Below, one piece after another: positions 19,339 to 29,483 of a DNA stretch of 64,000 nucleotides. Made by a program: the position numbers and the translations under genes. Source of the DNA: Thalia democratica (lineage: Eukaryota); the NCBI GenBank assembly GCA_965202585.1, contig OZ241827.1, positions 12,834,001 to 12,898,000 of the forward strand, written 5' to 3'. The notes under the pieces are model-generated. The model did not search any database and had not been told where the DNA came from. It worked only from the letters and a program-made list of their open reading frames with translations. Each line of letters opens with the position of its first letter. Position 1 is the stretch's first letter.

Positions 19339-20853
19339 TTAAGCGGGGAGGGAAAGCTTCTTGCCCTTGAGCACCTTGGTGACGTACAGGTAGAAGAAGT
19401 CGCAGTAGAGGATGGTCTGAACGACGCCGGCAACGATGGCGATGAGGTCGAAGAAGCCCTCGCTGTGGTAGCGGTACACCCAGTTGAAGAGGTACAGGCC
19501 GCGGTACAAACCGAGAGCGAACAGGTAGTGGGTGGTGATGGTCTCCGCCTCGCCTGTTTGGAAAATTTGAACGTTAAGATGGAGTTATAACTTTATTAGA
19601 ATAATGTTATTTAATTGTGTACTTTAATTAGAGGGTGAAACAATGTTTTGTTATAAATTTTTTAAAATAAAAAACTTGTTTTTATTTGTAAAAACTTTAA
19701 AACTTTACCAATTGTTAATTTTATTTTTTTTAATTCTGTCTTTCATCATATAAAAATATTTTTTTAATAAGAATTTTAATAACTTACCAGTCTTGCTGAT
19801 CATGAACAGTTGGGGAAGGATGGCAACCGATTCCAAGTAGATGGAGAAAGTCCACAAGATCTCCAATGCGCTGAACTCGTGGTTGACCAGGAAGGCGAGA
19901 CCGCCAACGGGAACAATGAGAAATTCCGCCCTGTTGTGTGGAGAAATAATATTAAATATTTAGTCTAAGGGCAGTGACTAAACAACTGTGTGTTAAAGTC
20001 ATCTGACTTTAAGGTAGTTTTGTTATAAACAGATTGTATTGAAAAGAGGCCAATGTAAAATAAACTTAGTTTTGCCAAACATAAACTTACAAAAAATTTT
20101 ATAAGGATAAACTCAGTGATAAAAACCTTAAAAACTGTTTATAAACATAAAACTAATAATTGTTTATGAAATATTTTTTTAATTGAAATTAAATATAAAA
20201 TAAAAATCTCAAAAAATGTAATGCATACCTGAAAGTGTCGTGATTGCCGTCGTAGGTGGCCTTGAACTTGACGTAGACGAGGTAGACGGTGAAGTAGGCG
20301 CAACCGATGTAAATGCACTTCATTGTCGAGTTGTACAGCGAGATGAAGTTGGTGAACAAGTCCAAGTATCTGCGAGTGATAGAATAAATTATACAAACAC
20401 ATCTAAAAACTACATAGTACTTAGGATCAAGTTGAAATAAATTAGTATAATGATTGCTTTAAGCCTCGTGGTAAATGCAAACATTGGCTGTAAGTAGAAA
20501 CTTATAAAAAGATGGTGAATATATTATTCTTTAATTTTCAAATAAAATTTATAAGCAATCTTGTTTGTACACAAATCTTTAAAAGGTTGAAAACTTTATA
20601 TTCTAGTTAAATTTTCAAACTTGCTGCTTAATCATTGAGTTTTGAAATACTTTCAGATTTTTCTATAATCAATTAACAAATGTAAACTGTATAAACTTTT
20701 ATTTTTAAACTACCTAGTAGTGAAGACGAGAGCGAACAGGAACTGGGATTTTCCGCTGATGCCTGCGCAACTCCTGGTTTTCCAGATTTTCATCAGAAGC
20801 AAGATGATTGCCAGCAAGTGGCTCAAATCCCCGGCCAGTCTGAACACATTCAT
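19339..20853 (-). CDS. KDELR: ER lumen protein-retaining (KDEL) receptor, canonical copy, 4 exons, 212 aa
   Basis: Exons 20853-20714, 20369-20229, 19930-19788, 19553-19339 (639 nt, GT-AG). Protein [17 protein letters not shown]...[10 protein letters not shown]...RYLDLF...[11 protein letters not shown]...[22 protein letters not shown], with R5, H12, R47, R169, D193 and the lysine tail intact. Confidence 0.97.
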
Positions 20854-20874: not shown

Positions 20875-20884
20875 CTGAAAGAAA
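20875..20884 (-). promoter_or_regulatory. 3' splice acceptor 21 nt upstream of the KDELR ATG
   Basis: TTTCTTTCAG|ATTATTTATTAATTATTCACTATG. Confidence 0.55.
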
Positions 20885-21717
20885 CGTTTGGTTGACAACT
20901 ATGATGGTTGTTTAACAGTTAAATTAGTGTGCAAGATTGAAGTGTTAAACAAGTACATGTACAGAAAACATATTTATGCCACATAATCTAATCTGCAAGA
21001 AAATAAAAAATGATTAACGTAAAAACATAATGTCTGTTTAACAGTTAAATTAGTGTGCCAACAGTTGCTTCAACTGAGCAAGTTTATAATGACATTTAGC
21101 CTGGGGCTATCAGCTTTACTACTTTAAGTAGCTGTGAAAATAAAACAAAAAACAAAACGGTAAGTTTAAAGAAGTTTAAAACTCAGCACATGGTTAAAAT
21201 AAAAACTTGTATATTTGTAGGTTTAGAACGGTACAACTTAAAATTTCAAACAAGTACACATACACAAGGAACATTATACCATGTACTCGCAAGTTTAATA
21301 CAAACAAATACTTATAAGAAACAACAAAAGTTCAAAAATATTAATGTTTATTTGACTGCTGAAGTTTCATGATTTAATTAATATCATATCTACTTAGATG
21401 TATCTAAAATTACAAAAGGCAGTTTAAACTCTATGTACATAATTATAGTTAGAACATATCATATTGAATAACTCAAAAACGTTAAAGTTATCAGCATAAA
21501 AAAGTAAGATATATGTAAATAAAAAACTATATAACTACAAAGTTAATCTCATTAGAAAAAGTACAGACACTTGCAAAATTTAATCAGCTTCGTTTATGCT
21601 TTGCATAGAAAAAACAACTAATTGCTTGAGAAAAACATCCAAAAAATACACTTATCTAGTATTTGATGTACTAAAAACATGTTTTTGAATCACAGAAACA
21701 TCCTTGAAACTCAAAAA

Positions 21718-22499
21718 TCAAACTGCAGCAGCCTGTGTTTCATCGTTGACCTCATTTTTGACGACAACATCAACTTTTCCCTGAGGCTTGTCATCAACGT
21801 TGGAAGAAACAACAACAACTTCATTTCTGGTTTCCAACAAGTCATTCTGCTCCAGCTGAAGGTACCCCCTAAGTCTATACTTACTCCCTCGGACTACTTT
21901 AGTCGCGTACATGTAGAAGAAAGGACAGTAAATAAGAGTTTGAACGATTCCACCACCTATTGCTATAAAATCATAGAACCCCTCGAGGTAGTACCTGTAC
22001 ACCCAGTTGGCAATGTAGAAAGCCCTGTACAAGCCGAGCAAAAATATGTAATGGAGCGTTATGGACTCGCACTCTCCCGTTTTGTTGAGCATGCAGAGCT
22101 GCGGGACTATTGCCACCGCTTCCAAGTAAATGGAAAACGTCCACATCACTTCCACGAACGACAGCTCGTGGTTTATCAGAACTGCTAGAATGAAACAAGG
22201 TACGAGCACCAAGTAGGACTTTTTAGGATTGTTTTTTCCGTTGTAAGTGTCTTTGTAGGTGCGGAAGGTCAGAAATACTGTCAGGTAGGTCAGGATGACA
22301 AAGAGGCACTTCATCATTGTGTTGTAGACGCTGATGAAGTTCGTGAAAAGGTCCAAGTACCTGGTGGAAAACACGACGGCGTAGAAGACCTGAGAAATGC
22401 CTGAGAGGCCGGAAACCGATCCGGTTCTGAATATTTTAACTAGAACACAACTATTGCCAATAAGTGAGACATGTCACCGATGAGCCTGAATACATTCAT
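21718..22499 (-). pseudogene. Intronless KDELR paralog A, with a 1-nt deletion near codon 19 (~22445) and an extended C-tail
   Basis: ATG at 22499 gives MNVFRLIGDMSHLLAIVV. The frame then shifts (14 nt where copy B has 5 codons) and is open to the stop at 21718. No introns at the parental positions. Could be a recent pseudogene or an assembly error. Confidence 0.85.
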
Positions 22500-23312
22500 G
22501 GTGTTTTCGTTTTATGTTTAGTGTGGACAAAAGCTTACTCTTTAGACTTTAAACAGTTTAGTGTTCTACTTGTAATTATTTGATAGAAAACCCATGAACA
22601 AGGTGAATGCAACAATTGACGTTTTAAAATCTTTCAACTGTAGTCCCAACTCTTTACTCTATTACAACCTATTAATTAGTTATAGTAGTACTTACAAATA
22701 TTATTAGTTTTTAAAAGCATTACCAAATAAAAACAAACTTTGTGAAACTTTTTAAGCAGTTAAAAGCAAACATGATTTGAAACTAAACAAATCTTATGGC
22801 TAAAAATATAGAAGCACCTTGTGTTCAAACAATCTTGATTAAAAAAACTAAATGTTTTTAAGAATGAGTTATAGAAAACAACTTAAACTAAATTTAGTAA
22901 TATTCTACATGGTTAAGTGCATGACTATAAATACATGTTGATTTCGAAAAAAATTTTTGATTTCAAAAAAACTGCAATATTTTGTTCATGATATACTAAA
23001 TACCATATTTATGTAATGTGTGTGTAATGGCAGCTTAAGTACAATGTGAGATTAGTTCAACAAAACATATTAAATTTAAAAATACAAAATGGTGTTAAGG
23101 CTATATAAATTTTATTAGTAAACCGCACATAATTACAAAAATTCACTTTAAATTCATATGTTTGAAAATTTAATAAAAAATACTACAAAAAGACATTTGG
23201 CTCTACAAAACTTAATCATGTTTATCTAGCCACACTACAGTTTTTGGCTTTTTAATGTTCCAAACTTTCATGTAAAAAAATTATTTATTTAACTTGAATA
23301 TACTGAAACAAG

Positions 23313-23460
23313 TCAAACAGCAACTGGTTTATGATCTGGAACCAGCTTCAACTTAAATTTTGACACCACGTCCACTCTTGAATCATGTATGTCATCAACC
23401 TTGCTTGAAACTGACATTTTTTATGTTTATTTTTTACGTCCTGAGAATCTCTCTGCTGGG
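23313..23460 (-). pseudogene. Relic C-terminal tail of a paralog-C-type KDELR copy
   Basis: Reads QQRDSQDVKNKHKK(fs)MSVSSKVDDIHDSRVDVVSKFKLKLVPDHKPVAV*, homologous to the copy C tail QSDPQEVKNKRVSSKVEDVLDSRVDVV. Confidence 0.75.
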
Positions 23461-23755
23461 AAATTCCAAATTGTATGTTTATAACTATTGCTAATACAAA
23501 TTAGATAAAAGTGGTGAAATGATAAAAAATGTCAAGGTTATCACTCAAAATATCAAAAAATTTAAACAAAATTCAGTACAAAAACAAGATTAAGCTTAGA
23601 GCGAAAAAGTACAGACACATGCTCTATTTAATTTGCTTCATTTTTGCATCGAAAAACTTAATTGATAAAGAAGTACATCTAAAAAAAGCTAATTTTCCAC
23701 AATTTACATCCTAAAAGCATTTTTGGATAACACAAACATCATTCAAACTCAAAAA

Positions 23756-24535
23756 TCAAACTGTAGTAGCTAGCGTTTCTTTGTTGATCTCATTTTTCAA
23801 CAAAACATCAACTTTTCCTTGAGGCTTGTCATCGACGTTGGAAGAAACAACAGCAACTTCGTTTCTGGTCTCAAAAAAATCACTCTGCTCCAGCTGAAGG
23901 AACCCCCTAACCTTATACTTATTTCCTATGACCACTTTAGTTGCGTACATGTAGAAGAAAGGGCAGTATGTAAGCATTTGAACAATACCACTGCACAAGG
24001 CAATATCGAATTCCATTACTTCAAAGTACCAGTTCACAATGAAGAAAGCTTTGTACACGCACAGACAAAATATGTAATGGAAAATTACAGGCTTGCACTC
24101 TCCCGTTTTGTTCAGCATCCAGAATTGCGGAGCCATTGCCACCACTTCCAGGTAAAACGAAAACGGCCGCATGACCTCCGTGAACGCCAAGTGTTCGTTT
24201 ACCAGAAGCGCTAGAACCAGACAAAATATAAGGATGAAGTAAAACTTTTTATGATCGTTTTTGCTGTCGTAAGTCTTTTTGTGGGTTTTGAAAATTAGAA
24301 AAACCGTCAGGTAGGTCAGGCTGAAGTAGATGCACTTCATCACTATGCTGTAGACGCTGTACAAGTATAGGAAGATATCCAGGTACCTGGTGGAAAAGAC
24401 AATGGCGTAAAACACCTGGGAAATGCCTGAAAGACCGGAAACTGATCCGGTTCTGAGGATTTTAACCAAGAGGACGTTTATTGCAAACAAGTGAGACATG
24501 TCTTTCATCAATGTTAAGACGTCCATGGGAACCAT
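23756..24535 (-). CDS. Intronless divergent KDELR paralog B, 259 aa, intact ORF
   Basis: Single ORF collinear with KDELR (DMSHL, SGISQ, RYLD, YLE, PQ, TGE, HY, YCPFF), plus a 47-aa tail ending -ATTV. Flanks are homologous to those of copy A (~2-kb duplication unit). Confidence 0.88.
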   Translation of the reverse strand: MVPMDVLTLMKDMSHLFAINVLLVKILRTGSVSGLSGISQVFYAIVFSTRYLDIFLYLYSVYSIVMKCIYFSLTYLTVFLIFKTHKKTYDSKNDHKKFYFILIFCLVLALLVNEHLAFTEVMRPFSFYLEVVAMAPQFWMLNKTGECKPVIFHYIFCLCVYKAFFIVNWYFEVMEFDIALCSGIVQMLTYCPFFYMYATKVVIGNKYKVRGFLQLEQSDFFETRNEVAVVSSNVDDKPQGKVDVLLKNEINKETLATTV

Positions 24536-25482
24536 GTTTTATGCTTGGTGCATACAAAAACTTACTATTCAGACTCAAAACAGTTTAGTGTTCTGCTTGT
24601 AATTAGTAACTATGAGACCATGTACAAGATGAAAAACAACACTTGAGGTCTAAAAATCTTCTTAATAATTAAGTCTTAACTTTGTTACAACCTGTTATGT
24701 ATTAGAGTAATATTTACAAATTTCATTATTTTTATACTTCATTACTTAGTTATACTAGCAGTTACAAAACATATTTTTTTAAAGCCATTACCATAAACAA
24801 TTACATAAACATATGAAATTTTGAAACAGTAAAAGGTGAACATGATTTTATACTAAACAAATCTTATAGGTTAAAATATTGAAGCAATTGGTGTTTAAAA
24901 AAACTTGTTCAAAAAACTAAATGTTGTTTAGAATGAATTATAGAAAACAACTAAAACTAAATTTAGTAATATTCTGCATGATTAAATGCATTATTATAAA
25001 TAAATGTTGATGTACTGTTACTTTAATTAAAAAAATTATTAACTCGTTTAAGGAGTTATACCCAACAACAAGTTACAATTATTAAAAAGCCTAAATTGCT
25101 AACAGGTTCAGTTTTATGGTATAAAAAAAAACAATTTCAAAGCAAATTATTTCTTTAACTTTTTAATTTCAAAAAAGCTGAAAATTTTTGTTCAAGCTTT
25201 ATGATTTACTTAATACCATCTTTGTGTAGTGTGTGTTAGGCAGCTTAATGCAGTGTGAGATCATTTAAACAAAATATATTTTTTAAAAGCAAGTGGGTAA
25301 AACAAAATTTTTTATATGATGGTAGGCTATACGAGTTTATCAAGTGAACCAAACATAATTAGCAAAAAAATGCACCTTAAACTTAAATATACTTAAGACT
25401 TAAGACAAAACTTACTGAACTTACTGTATCTTATTACTACAAACTAATAAGCCACGCTAAAATATTTAAATGTTTTATGGCT

Positions 25483-26237
25483 TTAAAATGTTCCAATAAC
25501 CACATCAACCCTTGAATCAAGTACGTCCTCAACCTTGCTTGAAACCCGTTTATTCTTTACTTCCTGAGGGTCTGACTGCTTCACCTCATTGTAACTCTGG
25601 CACCCCTTCAACCTGTAGCCTCTTCCCTTGCGCGCCTTGGTGAAGTACAGGTAGAAGAAGGGGAAGTAGATAATAGTTTGAAGCATCCCTCCAGATATTG
25701 CTATAAGATCGTAAAAGCCTCCATTGTAATACCTGTCTGCCCAGCTGGCTATGTAAAAAGCCCTGTACAGACCCAATACGAATACGTAGTGCATTGTGAT
25801 GGTCTCGCACTCTCCCGTTCTGCACAGCATTATTGTCTGCGGGATCATGGTCACGGCTTCCAGGTAGATGGAGAAAGTCCACATGACTTCCCTGAACGAA
25901 AACTCGTGGTTTATCAGACAGGATAAAAGGGCTACAGGGATTAAGAGAAGAAGGGTCCAGTGGGTATCATTTTTGTCATCATAAGAGCTCCTGTACTTGT
26001 AGTATACAAGCACTACTGTCAGATACGTGAGGAATATGAAGGCGCACACGTTATCGTGTTGTAATAACTGATAAAGATTGTGAACAAGTCCAGGTATCTG
26101 GTGGTGAACACCAGAGCGTAGAAGACCTGAGTTTTTCCAGACAGTCCTGAAACAGATCTTGTCATGAGGATCTTAACAACCAGAATGACCAAAGCAAGCA
26201 AGAGGGAGATATCAGCTATGGGCCTGTATATATTCAT
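25483..26237 (-). pseudogene. Intronless KDELR paralog C, with a 1-nt deletion near codon 64 (~26049)
   Basis: ORF 26237-26019 (MNIYRPIAD...RYLDLFTIFISYYNT) joins ORF 26049-25483 (CAFIFLTY...YFPFF...) when one base is restored. Confidence 0.85.
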
Positions 26238-27209
26238 GCTGAAGTTTTTCTTAAAGGACTTAATAATAATTTACAACATCCTAGTGTTACTTAAAAGGTA
26301 AAAAAACAAAAACAACCATACGAATGCTTAACAACTTGACATTAGTACATTTAACTTGCGATTGGCTGTAGATTTCTTAATAAATATGCTGACTCCCATG
26401 TACGCACTCTGCTGAGTTGGTTGAGGTGTAGAAGTTTACAAATTAGTTATTTATAATAATAACTGTAAAAATATTTCAAGTTTAGTAAAAAACTCATTTG
26501 TCTAAGTTTATAAAAACTATAAAATCTAAAAAACTGCACAGAACACATTGTGTATGTTCTGATAATATTTTAAAAGTGTGCCCTAATAAGGTATTGCATA
26601 GATTTTTAGGAAATTATTAAAAGGTGATGCATACTTATGTTATAAAAGAACGTATTAAAAAAGTTAAGAATTAAGTATTTCAAAAATTTGAGTGTTATAA
26701 AAGTCTACATAGCAAGATATAATTGTAAATATTAGCTAATGTTAAATTTTACTCAAAATTAATGTAAAAAGCTAGAAACTTGTGTAAGAAACAACAGAAT
26801 GGCTTCATTGATAAAATACATTATTTACAAATGTTTACACAACATAATTGCACTTCTATTTAAACAAAAAATGCAGTTGATTAAATTTAATAAAGTTAGA
26901 GGTCTTTAATTTATGCATTAATGACAACAGTGTACTCATAAACTTATTAAAAATATTTTATTTGTATGTATCAAACATACATTTTTAAATATATTTAGTT
27001 ATTAATTTACTATTCTTTCTTATTTAGTTACAATAAGTTTGAATCAAAAAATTCGAATGAAAAGTTTAAACCTGCATTTACAATGAATGCATGTGTGAAC
27101 CTGAAAGCTAAAAACTTACTTTATGAAAACCAAGTATTATGTAACATTAATAAGCAGTGAGCAGCTGTAAGTATATTTAAAAAATTGTATTTTAAGTTGT
27201 GTGTAAAGT

Positions 27210-29483
27210 CTACAGCTTCAATCGCTTGATGTCTGCATCCTTGAACTCCACCCTCAGTGCCAATATTTTTTTTACCTCAAAAGGGGTCAACCTCCACGTC
27301 ATGTGGCTCTGACCCCACCAATCCTTCATTTCCTCAACACTGTCCAAATTTAAAACAGTGCTGATCTGGTTCAACCTGCTGAACCTGTCCCTTACCGACC
27401 AGGAAGCTACAGTTGTGATGTAGGTGACCAGTGATCGGAGTTCCTTGTCAAAGAACATGGCACCTAATCTGTTGAACTTGCTCTTGACTACAGTGTTTTC
27501 TAGCAGAAGGACAACTTCGTTGACCACCCTGGTTATTAATTGGTCGTATATTTCCTCCATCAACAATTCATTGAACTTGCTTAATAAAGTTTGCAGGTTG
27601 AATATGAATTGCTCTGCCCACGGATCATCAGCCTCATACTCCTCATGCTCTTCCTCAGATATGTTGTGGCTGACTGACAAAAAGTTTGACACCTGCGGCT
27701 TGTACTCTGGCTTCACTGCTTTGTTGTGCAGTTCAGTGATTGCAGCGTCCCTGATTGCCACAAACTGCTGTGAGAGATTGTCCAGGTCATCCAGGCAGCT
27801 GTTGAACTTGTCCTCGTGGCCCTGCAAGTGATGCCTGAACAGCCTGTTGATGTCCTTGTCCAAGCTGGACTTCAGCCTCAGTATGTGCTGGCTGCTCACC
27901 TGCAAGTTGTTAATGGTGATCAGGTAGTTGTGCTGGGACACCCTCGTGTTGTCATCAACACTTTTGATCTTTCCCTGCTGGAAAGAGGACTGCATGACAG
28001 TGTAGGCGGAGCTGATGTTGCCCAAAACGCCACCAGCGTTGTAACCCTCCTCAACTGTGGCTTTCAGCATGTTTTTGAGGTCAGAGTCAAGTATGGTGAC
28101 AGTGTGGTTCAATATGACGCACACACAGTCTATAGAGGAGCTATCAATGGACCTTGCAATGCATTTTCTTATGATGAAGAAGACATCATCAACTATGCTT
28201 GAAGTTGTGCAGCCCTCTTCCAAATGGTTGAGCTCCTTTGCCCTGTGGATAGACTCCTTCATGTAGTACTCTTCAATGACTATGTATTTTGAAATGACAG
28301 TGTGAATGAACACTGACAAGTCAGAGCTTTTTATCCACTTTTGGAACTCAGACCAGGACTCATCTCTTTCACTTTGGTTCGGGTAGACAATCTCAATGTC
28401 AGCCTTGATGCGCCTCTTGATGAACCTGAGATAGAGCTCAGCGCGGGAGCTTATCACTGTTATTTCATTTAACAATGTTTCCAGCTTTCTGGGGTCAAGC
28501 TTTTTAACTTCTTCATTTTTCTTGCTGTTGGCAAACATTGAAATTTGAACCTGCCTCTCAGTCTCAGCAAAGTTCCTCTGCTTGAGAAACTCATTGAGTA
28601 TCTTGTTGGCCTGCTTGTCACATTCAATCTGCAGGTTTTTCATCAAATCAAACAGCTTTCCAGGGCCATAGTAAGTCTCAACAAGAATCTGCTGCGTTTC
28701 TATTGTCTTGGCAATGCCCTCAAACAGAATTGTCAGTATGTCTGAAAAGATAATGTGGTACTTGGAGTCTGTTTTTTCAATGTTCACTGCTTGTTTAAGG
28801 TTGCTGGTGGCGCTCTTTGCAATTTCACCAGAGAGGTACTTGGAAAACTTGGTCAGGCCCAGGTCTTCCAGTTTCAGCCAGGGGAAAATTTTAAAGAATT
28901 TTTCAACATCTGCCTGGTTTCCTTCCTGCACTGCTAGGTCAAATTTTTCAGAGACCACTTTTGACATCTCCTCCCTGGCGTTCTTGAGAACTTGCAGTGA
29001 GGCGTTTATGTTGGTGCTCTCAGCTCCAATGTTCACGCTCTGCTTTATAACATTCTCATCTAGGCACAGGTACCTGTGAATGTTTGCAGCAGCCTTCTCA
29101 TAGTCCTGACACTCCATGGCCATCTTGACACCATCTGTGCAGGTTTTCAGGTCAAGAATGTCATCAACCCTTTGTATGGCCTTGAACACCTGGTTCTTTG
29201 CCAAATCTAGCAGCTTCACTTTGGAGCTGATGTCGTCAGCAAGCGTGGAAGTGAACTCTATGGTCTTGCCCAGTCCAACCAGCTCTGTTTGGGCGACTGA
29301 CAGCAGTGGAATGCTGCCATAGAGCTGCTTCATCTGGGCTTCCAAAGTGCTTTTGTTCTGCAGCAGGCCGTCCAGTTTTGCAGTGTGGTGTTTCTCTTCA
29401 TCTTCAACTCTCAAGATTGCCTCTTCTATTTCGTCCAAAGTTGACAGGTTCTTAATTTTGTCTGGAATCTTAGCCAGCTCCAT
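27210..29483 (-). CDS. COG4: Conserved oligomeric Golgi complex subunit 4, single coding exon, 757 aa
   Basis: Motifs LLDLAKN...QRVDDILDLK...DYEKAAANIHRYL, SSIVDDVFFIIRK, KFNRLGAMFFDKELRSL and WRLTPFEVKKILALRVEF match recalled COG4 sequence. Confidence 0.95.
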   Translation of the reverse strand: MELAKIPDKIKNLSTLDEIEEAILRVEDEEKHHTAKLDGLLQNKSTLEAQMKQLYGSIPLLSVAQTELVGLGKTIEFTSTLADDISSKVKLLDLAKNQVFKAIQRVDDILDLKTCTDGVKMAMECQDYEKAAANIHRYLCLDENVIKQSVNIGAESTNINASLQVLKNAREEMSKVVSEKFDLAVQEGNQADVEKFFKIFPWLKLEDLGLTKFSKYLSGEIAKSATSNLKQAVNIEKTDSKYHIIFSDILTILFEGIAKTIETQQILVETYYGPGKLFDLMKNLQIECDKQANKILNEFLKQRNFAETERQVQISMFANSKKNEEVKKLDPRKLETLLNEITVISSRAELYLRFIKRRIKADIEIVYPNQSERDESWSEFQKWIKSSDLSVFIHTVISKYIVIEEYYMKESIHRAKELNHLEEGCTTSSIVDDVFFIIRKCIARSIDSSSIDCVCVILNHTVTILDSDLKNMLKATVEEGYNAGGVLGNISSAYTVMQSSFQQGKIKSVDDNTRVSQHNYLITINNLQVSSQHILRLKSSLDKDINRLFRHHLQGHEDKFNSCLDDLDNLSQQFVAIRDAAITELHNKAVKPEYKPQVSNFLSVSHNISEEEHEEYEADDPWAEQFIFNLQTLLSKFNELLMEEIYDQLITRVVNEVVLLLENTVVKSKFNRLGAMFFDKELRSLVTYITTVASWSVRDRFSRLNQISTVLNLDSVEEMKDWWGQSHMTWRLTPFEVKKILALRVEFKDADIKRLKL

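What the first reader, a model, noticed from the sequence alone, without database searches (positions are those of the whole stretch)
21718..26237. KDELR paralog array that lost retrograde-trafficking determinants while copy A keeps the ligand pocket: a candidate non-retrieving (decoy/forward/surface) KDEL receptor subfamily
Seen: the parent has YCD193FF (GAC at 19399-19401). All three paralogs have Pro there (A YCPFF 21921-23, B YCPFF 23960-62, C YFPFF 25660-62). The parental KVLKGKKLS209 becomes KVVRGSKYR (A), KVVIGNKYK (B) and KARKGRGYR (C). Copy A (frame-corrected) keeps R5, D9, H12, R47, Y48, E117, W120, E127, Y158, R159, Y162, W166, R169 and D177. Established: D193N receptors bind ligand but fail to recycle, the K204/K206/K207 cluster recruits COPI, and S209 is a PKA site linked to retrieval. 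Inference: the shared ancestor of the paralogs uncoupled cargo binding from Golgi-to-ER return. It could sequester or export KDEL proteins, or act as a surface receptor.
Basis: partly seen in the sequence, partly recalled or inferred. Interest (0 to 1): 0.85.

Follow-up and report, generated by a model that had tools for sequence, protein, structure and literature searches.

The report
Tailed KDEL-receptor subfamily in pelagic tunicates
Next to the normal KDEL receptor gene of a planktonic tunicate lie three intronless copies of a conserved receptor family that keeps the cargo-binding pocket but has rebuilt its cytosolic side and gained a new tail, so cargo binding has probably been uncoupled from return to the ER.

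Summary
Three intronless KDELR paralogs (C, B, A) lie between COG4 and the 4-exon parent, all on the minus strand. All three have Pro at D193, altered K204/K206/S209, and a 40-50 aa tail.

They are not a private oddity. Nine intact orthologues occur in Tara Oceans contigs of related species, which makes a 12-member clade (100/100). Gene order is conserved, and dN/dS is 0.06-0.35. D193 is invariant in 70 canonical receptors and is Pro in 11 of the 12.

Conserved positions are replaced mainly in the cytosolic half (21/77 against 2/51 in the luminal half, p=7e-4). The LxLPA C-terminus is lost. The tail carries an invariant G-Y-x-x-hydrophobic motif, with the Tyr at the old stop position.

Caveats:
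- In this assembly, A and C each carry a 1-nt deletion.
- C also has H12L and a K64 lesion.
- B is intact but lacks pocket residues.
- The RNA evidence comes from a sister species.

The scan noted this same stretch before, with other readings (s1-292047, s1-292046, s1-291954). I judge it a new variant of a known kind, of moderate to high interest.

The parts
19339..20853 (-). Parent canonical KDELR, 212 aa. Its 4 exons are 20853-20713, 20368-20228, 19929-19786 and 19551-19339. It has D193, K201/K204/K206, S209 and the LSLPA end.
   Evidence: GT-AG introns. The spliced exon 1-exon 2 junction is seen in metatranscriptome X3 at depth about 2000. P0018 is identical but for one residue.
21718..22499 (-). 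Copy A (A-type), intronless, 260 codons. It has the full ligand pocket, P193 at 21922-21924, and a tail at 21721-21864 that starts with Tyr (TAC) at the ancestral stop position.
   Evidence: Terminal-branch omega is about 0.18.
22444..22446 (-). 1-nt deletion in copy A relative to all orthologues (codon 19), which creates a TAG.
   Evidence: The only contig of run X5 at this site carries the extra base that restores the frame.
23756..24535 (-). Copy B (B-type), an intact 259-aa ORF. P193 is at 23960-23962. The pocket is degenerate: R5T, W120R, R159K, Y162F, R169 deleted. The tail is at 23759-23902, and its Tyr and di-Leu have become Phe.
   Evidence: The orthologue P0001 is 82% identical, and omega is 0.34. 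No RNA run holds it.
25483..26237 (-). Copy C (C-type), intronless, 251 codons. P193 is at 25660-25662, H12L is present, and the tail is at 25486-25602.
   Evidence: Orthologues are P0011 (about 90%), P0012 and P0006.
26046..26049 (-). 1-nt deletion in copy C at codon 64, with M63T and loss of the otherwise invariant K64.
   Evidence: The X5 contig carries an extra base here that restores the frame.
27210..29483 (-). Intronless COG4 (757 aa), the upstream neighbour. The COG4 -> C-type gene order is conserved in a related species.

Best explanation
The three copies belong to a lineage-specific, intronless, tandemly arrayed subfamily of KDEL receptors found in pelagic tunicates.

Shown:
- The subfamily is monophyletic and syntenic across species, and it has been kept by purifying selection.
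- A-type members, and some C-type members, keep the luminal machinery: R47/R159 for the ligand carboxylate, the E127-Y158 bond and the pH sensor H12.
- The cytosolic half is rebuilt. D193 is Pro, KxxKxK has become KxxRxN, S209 is lost and the loops are changed.
- The LxLPA end is replaced, probably by a stop-to-Tyr change, with a disordered 40-50 aa tail.

Inferred:
- A-type receptors still bind KDEL-like C-termini in acidic compartments but no longer couple binding to COPI return or cis-Golgi residency.
- The tail takes over sorting and sends the receptor on a different route, most likely post-Golgi. Its conserved elements are G-Y-x-x-hydrophobic, an S-x-x-acidic cluster, E-x-x-x-L-L in A-types, and a K/R-V-D-V-V hydrophobic end.
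- B-type copies are relaxed offshoots that lost the pocket.
- In this assembly, A and C carry young frameshifts that are either null alleles or consensus errors.
For: - Family: PF00810 matches. Nine intact orthologues of 241-263 aa in Tara Oceans contigs. Clade support 100/100.
- Synteny: COG4 -> C-type, C-type -> A-type and B-type -> A-type.
- Selection, pairwise omega: A-type 0.06-0.16, C-P0006 0.10, B 0.34.
- Selection, window terminal branches: omega 0.18, 0.43 and 0.26-0.35, with p = 7e-4 to 0.03 against neutrality.
- Selection, ML omega: core 0.23, tail 0.34.
- Residue table.
- Cytosolic against luminal replacements at conserved positions: 21/77 against 2/51, Fisher p = 7e-4.
- Structure: the AF2 core superposes on KDELR2 (TM-score 0.97, rmsd 1.1-1.2 A), and the tail has pLDDT below 50. 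The alignment to chicken KDELR2 is gapless over residues 1-210.
- Tail invariants across types.
- Literature: D193N stays in the Golgi after ligand binding, and S209 is a PKA site (PMC6888596). K201/K204/K206 are the COPI-exposed lysines (PMC7561476). LxLPA is needed for function and Golgi residency, and masking it inactivates the receptor (PMC10036638).
- Transcripts over A- and C-type genes, with no depth in most of the spacers, in metatranscriptome X3.
Against: - No localisation or binding data exist.
- YxxPhi and di-Leu are short motifs that arise easily. The E-x-x-x-L-L is absent from C-types, and both motifs are lost in window B.
- R169, and in some copies other pocket residues, are lost in 5 of 12 members, so ligand binding is not constrained family-wide.
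- Alvim et al. saw no post-Golgi leakage when LxLPA was masked.
- In this genome A and C are frame-shifted. An X5 contig has a further +TT in A that would create a stop. C has H12L and a K64 lesion.
- X3 reads over A share 16 of 18 variants with L004, so they come from a sister species.
- No RNA run holds B.
- The AF2 model is biased by canonical sequences in its alignment.
Confidence: 0.5

Rival explanations
1. In this species the array is decaying. A and C are young pseudogenes, B is a relaxed relic, and the family's function, whatever it was, is being lost here.
For: - 1-nt deletions in A and C, in non-homopolymer contexts.
- A different +TT lesion in A in run X5.
- C has H12L and loss of the invariant K64.
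- B omega is 0.34-0.43 with pocket residues gone.
- No RNA run holds B.
Against: - Terminal-branch omega of window A is 0.18 (p = 7e-4) and of window C 0.26-0.35, so any decay is very recent.
- The only X5 contigs at both deletion sites carry the frame-restoring base.
- B's ORF is intact.
- RNA contigs near-identical to the window cover C's 3' end.
- Orthologues in the other species are all intact.
Confidence: 0.2
2. The paralogs are still ER-retrieval receptors that have been subfunctionalised by tissue or by ligand variant. D193P and the tail would then be tolerated or compensated.
For: - The pocket, H12, K201 and the overall fold are kept in A-types.
- Selection is purifying.
- They lie in tandem with the parent.
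Against: - D193 is invariant in 70 canonical receptors.
- D193N blocks retrograde movement.
- LxLPA is required for function and is inactivated by C-terminal masking.
- K204/K206 and S209 are changed.
- 21 conserved positions in the cytosolic half are replaced.
Confidence: 0.15
3. The paralogs are Golgi-resident ligand sinks or dominant-negative modulators. They would work like a natural D193N, binding KDEL cargo without moving and so tuning chaperone secretion or KDELR signalling.
For: - D193N binds ligand and stays in the Golgi.
- The pocket is kept in A-types.
Against: - This does not explain the conserved tail with its invariant Tyr motif, nor the loss of the Golgi-residency motif LxLPA.
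- Pocket-less B-types could not act as sinks.
Confidence: 0.15

Closest known systems
Canonical KDEL receptors (KDELR1-3 / ERD2; chicken KDELR2 structures 6i6h, 6i6b, 6zxr)
   Same: - PF00810 domain.
- 57% identity, gapless over residues 1-210.
- The predicted core superposes at TM-score 0.97.
- A-types keep R47, R159, E127-Y158, H12, D50, E117, W120, W166 and R169.
   Different: - D193 is Pro.
- K204 is Arg and K206 is Asn, Ser or Asp.
- S209 is lost.
- LxLPA is replaced by a 40-50 aa tail.
- 21 conserved cytosolic-half positions are replaced.
- The genes are intronless.
Engineered KDELR1 D193N mutant
   Same: The same position is lost while the ligand pocket is retained. The mutant binds ligand but does not return to the ER.
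   Different: This is a natural, fixed change to Pro rather than Asn. It is accompanied by many other cytosolic changes and a new tail. Its behaviour is untested.
C-terminally masked or LLGG-mutated ERD2 (Alvim et al. 2023, PMC10036638)
   Same: The native LxLPA end is destroyed or buried by extra C-terminal sequence.
   Different: Those constructs are inactive artefacts. Here the extension is conserved under selection and carries its own motifs.
Adaptor-sorted post-Golgi cargo receptors (M6P receptors, sortilin, plant VSRs), from my own knowledge
   Same: A luminal pH-dependent ligand site combined with a disordered cytosolic tail carrying YxxPhi, an acidic cluster and di-Leu-type motifs.
   Different: There is no homology, and the resemblance rests on motifs alone. 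A seven-helix PQ-loop fold replaces a type I receptor.
P0015 (L010), a tailed KDELR duplicate in an unrelated, arthropod-like organism
   Same: D193 is lost (to Lys), there is a C-terminal extension of about 56 aa, and it lies in tandem upstream of a canonical copy.
   Different: It keeps the KxxRxKK cluster and canonical loops. It groups outside the tunicate clade, so it is probably independent.

Membership tests
KDEL receptor / ERD2 (PF00810) | Pfam ER_lumen_recept match above the gathering score | tested here: met
   A 150.7, B 137 and C 115.1 bits against a cut-off of 25.6.
KDEL receptor / ERD2 (PF00810) | Seven-helix KDELR fold | tested here: met
   The AF2 model of the A-type orthologue P0002 matches 6zxr and 6i6h at TM-score 0.97 and rmsd 1.1-1.2 A. 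The window copies themselves were not modelled.
KDEL receptor / ERD2 (PF00810) | Ligand and pH machinery: R47, R159, E127-Y158 and H12 | tested here: inconclusive
   All are present in A and most A-types. B has R159K. Window C has H12L. Binding itself was not tested.
Retrieval-competent KDEL receptor | Asp193 in TM7 | tested here: not met
   Pro in 11 of 12 members and Ala in 1. Asp in 70 of 70 canonical receptors.
Retrieval-competent KDEL receptor | KxxKxK lysines K201/K204/K206 | tested here: not met
   K201 is kept. K204 is Arg or Ile in A and B types. K206 is Ser, Asn, Asp or Arg in all members.
Retrieval-competent KDEL receptor | Ser209 PKA site | tested here: not met
   Arg or Lys in every member, except that the position is deleted in the B-type orthologue.
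Retrieval-competent KDEL receptor | Free C-terminal LxLPA motif | tested here: not met
   L208 is Tyr or Phe in 9 of 9, P211-A212 are changed, and 40-50 residues follow.
Processed pseudogene | Neutral evolution (dN/dS near 1) and decay across species | tested here: not met
   Omega is 0.06-0.35, and nine orthologues are intact.
Processed pseudogene | Intronless copy of an intron-bearing parent | tested here: met
   The ORFs run uninterrupted across the parent's three intron positions. No poly(A) tract or target-site duplications were looked for.
Adaptor-sorted post-Golgi receptor (works-like claim only) | Conserved cytosolic YxxPhi or [DE]xxxL[LI] motif | tested here: inconclusive
   G-Y-x-x-L/V is invariant in the 8 orthologue tails aligned and present in window A and C, but is Phe in window B. 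E-x-x-x-L-L is kept in A-types and in the B-type orthologue, and is lost in window B. Adaptor binding is not testable here.

The most novel reading that the evidence does not exclude
The subfamily may be a forward-running KDEL receptor that reuses the pH switch in the opposite direction. It would bind KDEL-like C-termini in the acidic TGN or endosomes and carry them to the cell surface. It would release them at the neutral-to-alkaline pH outside the cell. The empty receptor would then be re-internalised through its invariant tail tyrosine motif. That would make it a dedicated secretion or exchange route for KDEL-tagged proteins in heavily secreting pelagic tunicates.
Probability: 0.12. Interest if true: 0.85.

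Novelty: new variant of a known kind. Interest (0 to 1): 0.6.

Why it matters
KDEL receptors are among the most conserved trafficking receptors, and how ligand binding is coupled to coat choice is still disputed (recycling against the Golgi-gatekeeper model).

This family is a natural experiment kept by selection. The luminal pocket is preserved, while D193, the lysine cluster, S209 and the LxLPA end are all replaced and a new tail is added.

Expressing these proteins, or grafting their changes onto human KDELR, would test directly which cytosolic elements set the receptor's itinerary. It would also test whether a KDEL-binding receptor can work outside the ER-Golgi loop.

Tried and rejected
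- A profile of the tail alone against 1.84 billion representatives found nothing. A language-model look-up of the tail gave only scores below 0.8. The tail therefore has no detectable relatives.
- The tail DNA shows no similarity to the present parent 3'UTR beyond shuffles. The stop-to-Tyr read-through origin therefore rests on alignment position only.
- The tree could not place the family relative to the parent, because the canonical KDELRs form a polytomy. Derivation from the tunicate parent rests on shared C65 and V167, seen by eye (C65 is also in the table).
- I looked for independent same-species contigs through the 99%-identical COG4 (P0123). Those contigs turned out to be from a sister species with 88% nucleotide identity.
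- A search for RNA runs holding copy B found none.
- Literature searches for tunicate or intronless KDELR paralogs found nothing relevant.
- Pure pseudogene decay of the family is rejected on dN/dS and the intact orthologues.
- The upstream and downstream flanks of the copies show no similarity to the parent's UTRs. A and B do share flanks, so they arose by segmental duplication.
Full report
**What is there**

All features are on the minus strand. An intronless COG4 (27210-29483) comes first. It is followed by three intronless KDELR-like genes: C (25483-26237), B (23756-24535) and A (21718-22499). The 4-exon canonical KDELR follows, with GT-AG introns and exons at 20853-20713, 20368-20228, 19929-19786 and 19551-19339.

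All three paralogs match Pfam PF00810 far above its threshold. No other copies are in the window. The best named COG4 relatives are Ciona (56%), Clavelina (55%), Phallusia (53%) and Styela (52%). The stretch is held by marine metatranscriptomes and Tara Oceans metagenomes. The organism is therefore a tunicate. A pelagic, thaliacean-like lifestyle is my inference.

**Checking the observation**

- The parent's D193 is GAC at 19399-19401.
- Alignment of an A-type orthologue to chicken KDELR2 is gapless over residues 1-210, so the numbering transfers directly.

D193N stays in the Golgi after ligand binding, and S209 is a PKA site needed for COPI recruitment (PMC6888596). The structural papers, however, name K201, K204 and K206 as the exposed lysines (PMC7561476).

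**The copies are part of a conserved family**

Searches found nine intact proteins of 241-263 aa in marine contigs:
- A-type: P0002, P0003, P0004, P0005.
- B-type: P0001.
- C-type: P0006, P0011, P0012.

All are intronless in their contigs. With the window's three copies they form one clade with 100/100 support, split into C-type and A/B-type subclades. B-type sits on a long branch inside A-type.

Gene order is conserved in related species:
- COG4 -> C-type in L011.
- C-type -> A-type in L008.
- B-type -> A-type in L002.

**Selection**

| Comparison | omega | Source |
|---|---|---|
| A against its orthologues (dS 0.28-1.9) | 0.06-0.16 | |
| C against P0006 | 0.10 | |
| B against its orthologue | 0.34 | |
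| Window A terminal branch (parsimony) | about 0.18 | |
| Window B terminal branch | 0.43 | |
| Window C terminal branch | 0.26-0.35 | |
| ML, family core | 0.23 | |
| ML, tail | 0.34 | |
| ML, A-type | 0.16 | |
| ML, C-type | 0.26 | |

All three terminal branches fall below neutral expectation (one-sided p = 7e-4, 0.026 and 0.003-0.004). Synonymous divergence from the parent is saturated, so the duplication is old.

**What changed**

D193 is invariant in 70 canonical receptors. It is Pro in 11 of 12 family members and Ala in P0001.

I took positions that are at least 90% conserved in canonical receptors and split them by membrane half. The family has replaced 21 of 77 in the cytosolic half but only 2 of 51 in the luminal half (odds ratio 9.2, Fisher p = 7e-4). 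The helix boundaries I used are approximate.

The cytosolic replacements include W24, R27, C29, F40, the 82-96 loop, A144C, D193, L208 and A212. K204 becomes Arg in A-types. K206 is never Lys. S209 is Arg or Lys.

The canonical end LxLPA is required for ER-retention activity and Golgi residency, and it is inactivated by C-terminal masking (PMC10036638). In the family it is replaced by Y-K/R-L-R/K-G plus 40-50 further residues.

**The tail**

- Its first invariant residue is a Tyr that aligns exactly with the parent's stop codon (parent TAA, copy A TAC). This suggests a stop-loss read-through. No DNA similarity to the present 3'UTR remains.
- Across A, B and C types the orthologue tails keep G-Y-x-x-L/V, a Q-x-D, a Ser followed by acidic residues, and K/R-V-D-V/I-V near a hydrophobic end.
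- A-types also keep E-Q-N/S-D-L-L.
- AF2 predicts the core with pLDDT 81-96 and the tail below 50. The core superposes on peptide-bound KDELR2 at TM-score 0.97.
- The tail has no detectable relatives.

**Caveats for this genome**

- Copy A lacks one base at codon 19, which gives a TAG. Copy C lacks one base at codon 64. All orthologues have these bases.
- In run X5 (the same species label, mosaic identity) the only contigs over both sites carry an extra base that restores each frame. The X5 contig over 22109 also has a TT insertion that would create a stop in A.
- Window C also has H12L, and M63T with loss of the otherwise invariant K64.
- B is intact but lacks R5, W120, R159, Y162 and R169, as does its orthologue.
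- R169 or other pocket residues are also lost in P0003, P0012 and P0006, so ligand binding is not constrained in every member.

**Expression**

Metatranscriptome X3 shows the following:
- spliced parent mRNA at depth about 2000;
- copy A coverage over 21694-22208 at depth about 46-77;
- copy C coverage over 25499-26209 at depth about 8;
- no depth in most of the spacers.

However, X3's variants over A match L004 at 16 of 18 sites, so these transcripts belong to a sister species whose A-type ORF is intact.

Contigs near-identical to the window in X1 and X2 (X2 is oligo-dT primed) cover C's 3' end and the spacer towards B at low depth. No RNA run holds B.

**Interpretation**

The family is a real, selected derivative of KDELR whose cytosolic sorting information has been exchanged while the luminal pocket was kept in the main (A-type) lineage. 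By precedent from D193N and from LxLPA masking, it should not perform canonical retrieval.

The conserved tail motifs resemble clathrin-adaptor signals. I therefore favour a non-cis-Golgi, probably post-Golgi, itinerary. This is inference from short motifs.

Rival readings are given in the report with their tests:
- recent decay in this species;
- retained retrieval with subfunctionalisation;
- a Golgi sink.

**Novelty**

No paper in the searchable library describes such paralogs. I class the finding as a new variant of a known kind.

The same stretch was noted before by other first readers of this scan, under different readings: intronless tandem paralogs, tails past the stop codon, and a possible operon.

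Noticed in passing
L010:551-1357 and L010:3465-3839: P0015 is a 268-aa KDELR with C192W/D193K and a tail of about 56 aa. It lies 2.1 kb upstream of a canonical-looking, uninterrupted KDELR copy in an unrelated organism (a Logan assembly). In the tree it groups weakly with a beetle receptor. It is possibly an independent, convergent origin of a tailed KDELR that lacks D193.
   Followed up: partly
window 21721-21864 against 23759-23902; L004 against L002; L001 against L003: The tails of tandem A/B-type copies are far more alike within a species than the cores are. Nucleotide differences are 3.8% against 24%, 4.2% against 16.5%, and 15% against 25%, and synonymous sites follow the same pattern. 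This points to gene conversion at the 3' ends.
   Followed up: partly
L004:337-1080 and L002:642-1367: In one related species both the A-type and the B-type gene end 13 codons early, right after the V-D-V-V motif. The last 13 residues are therefore dispensable there.
   Followed up: no
window 22109-22111: The only contig of run X5 over this site has a TT insertion inside copy A that would create a premature stop. This would be a second, different lesion in A in this species, if the contig is from this locus.
   Followed up: partly
window 24702-25548: RNA-library contigs near-identical to the window (X1, and X2 which is oligo-dT primed) cover the 3' end of copy C and about 780 nt of spacer towards copy B. 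This could be a long 3'UTR, read-through or a polycistronic transcript. Contig L008 likewise spans a C-type and an A-type gene.
   Followed up: no
window 27210-29483: COG4 is a single 757-codon ORF without introns, while the neighbouring canonical KDELR keeps three introns. Intron loss seems common here, so intronless paralogs need not be retrocopies.
   Followed up: no
window 26238-26243 and 20875-20885: An acceptor-like 'ttcag' ends 1 nt before copy C's ATG, and 'tttctttcag' ends 22 nt before the parent's ATG. These are possible spliced-leader acceptor sites. No such site is obvious upstream of A or B.
   Followed up: no
P0010 (Cyprideis torosa, 383 aa): This public annotation fuses about 1.8 canonical KDELR units into one protein. 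It is probably a tandem duplicate merged by gene prediction and is not a family member.
   Followed up: no
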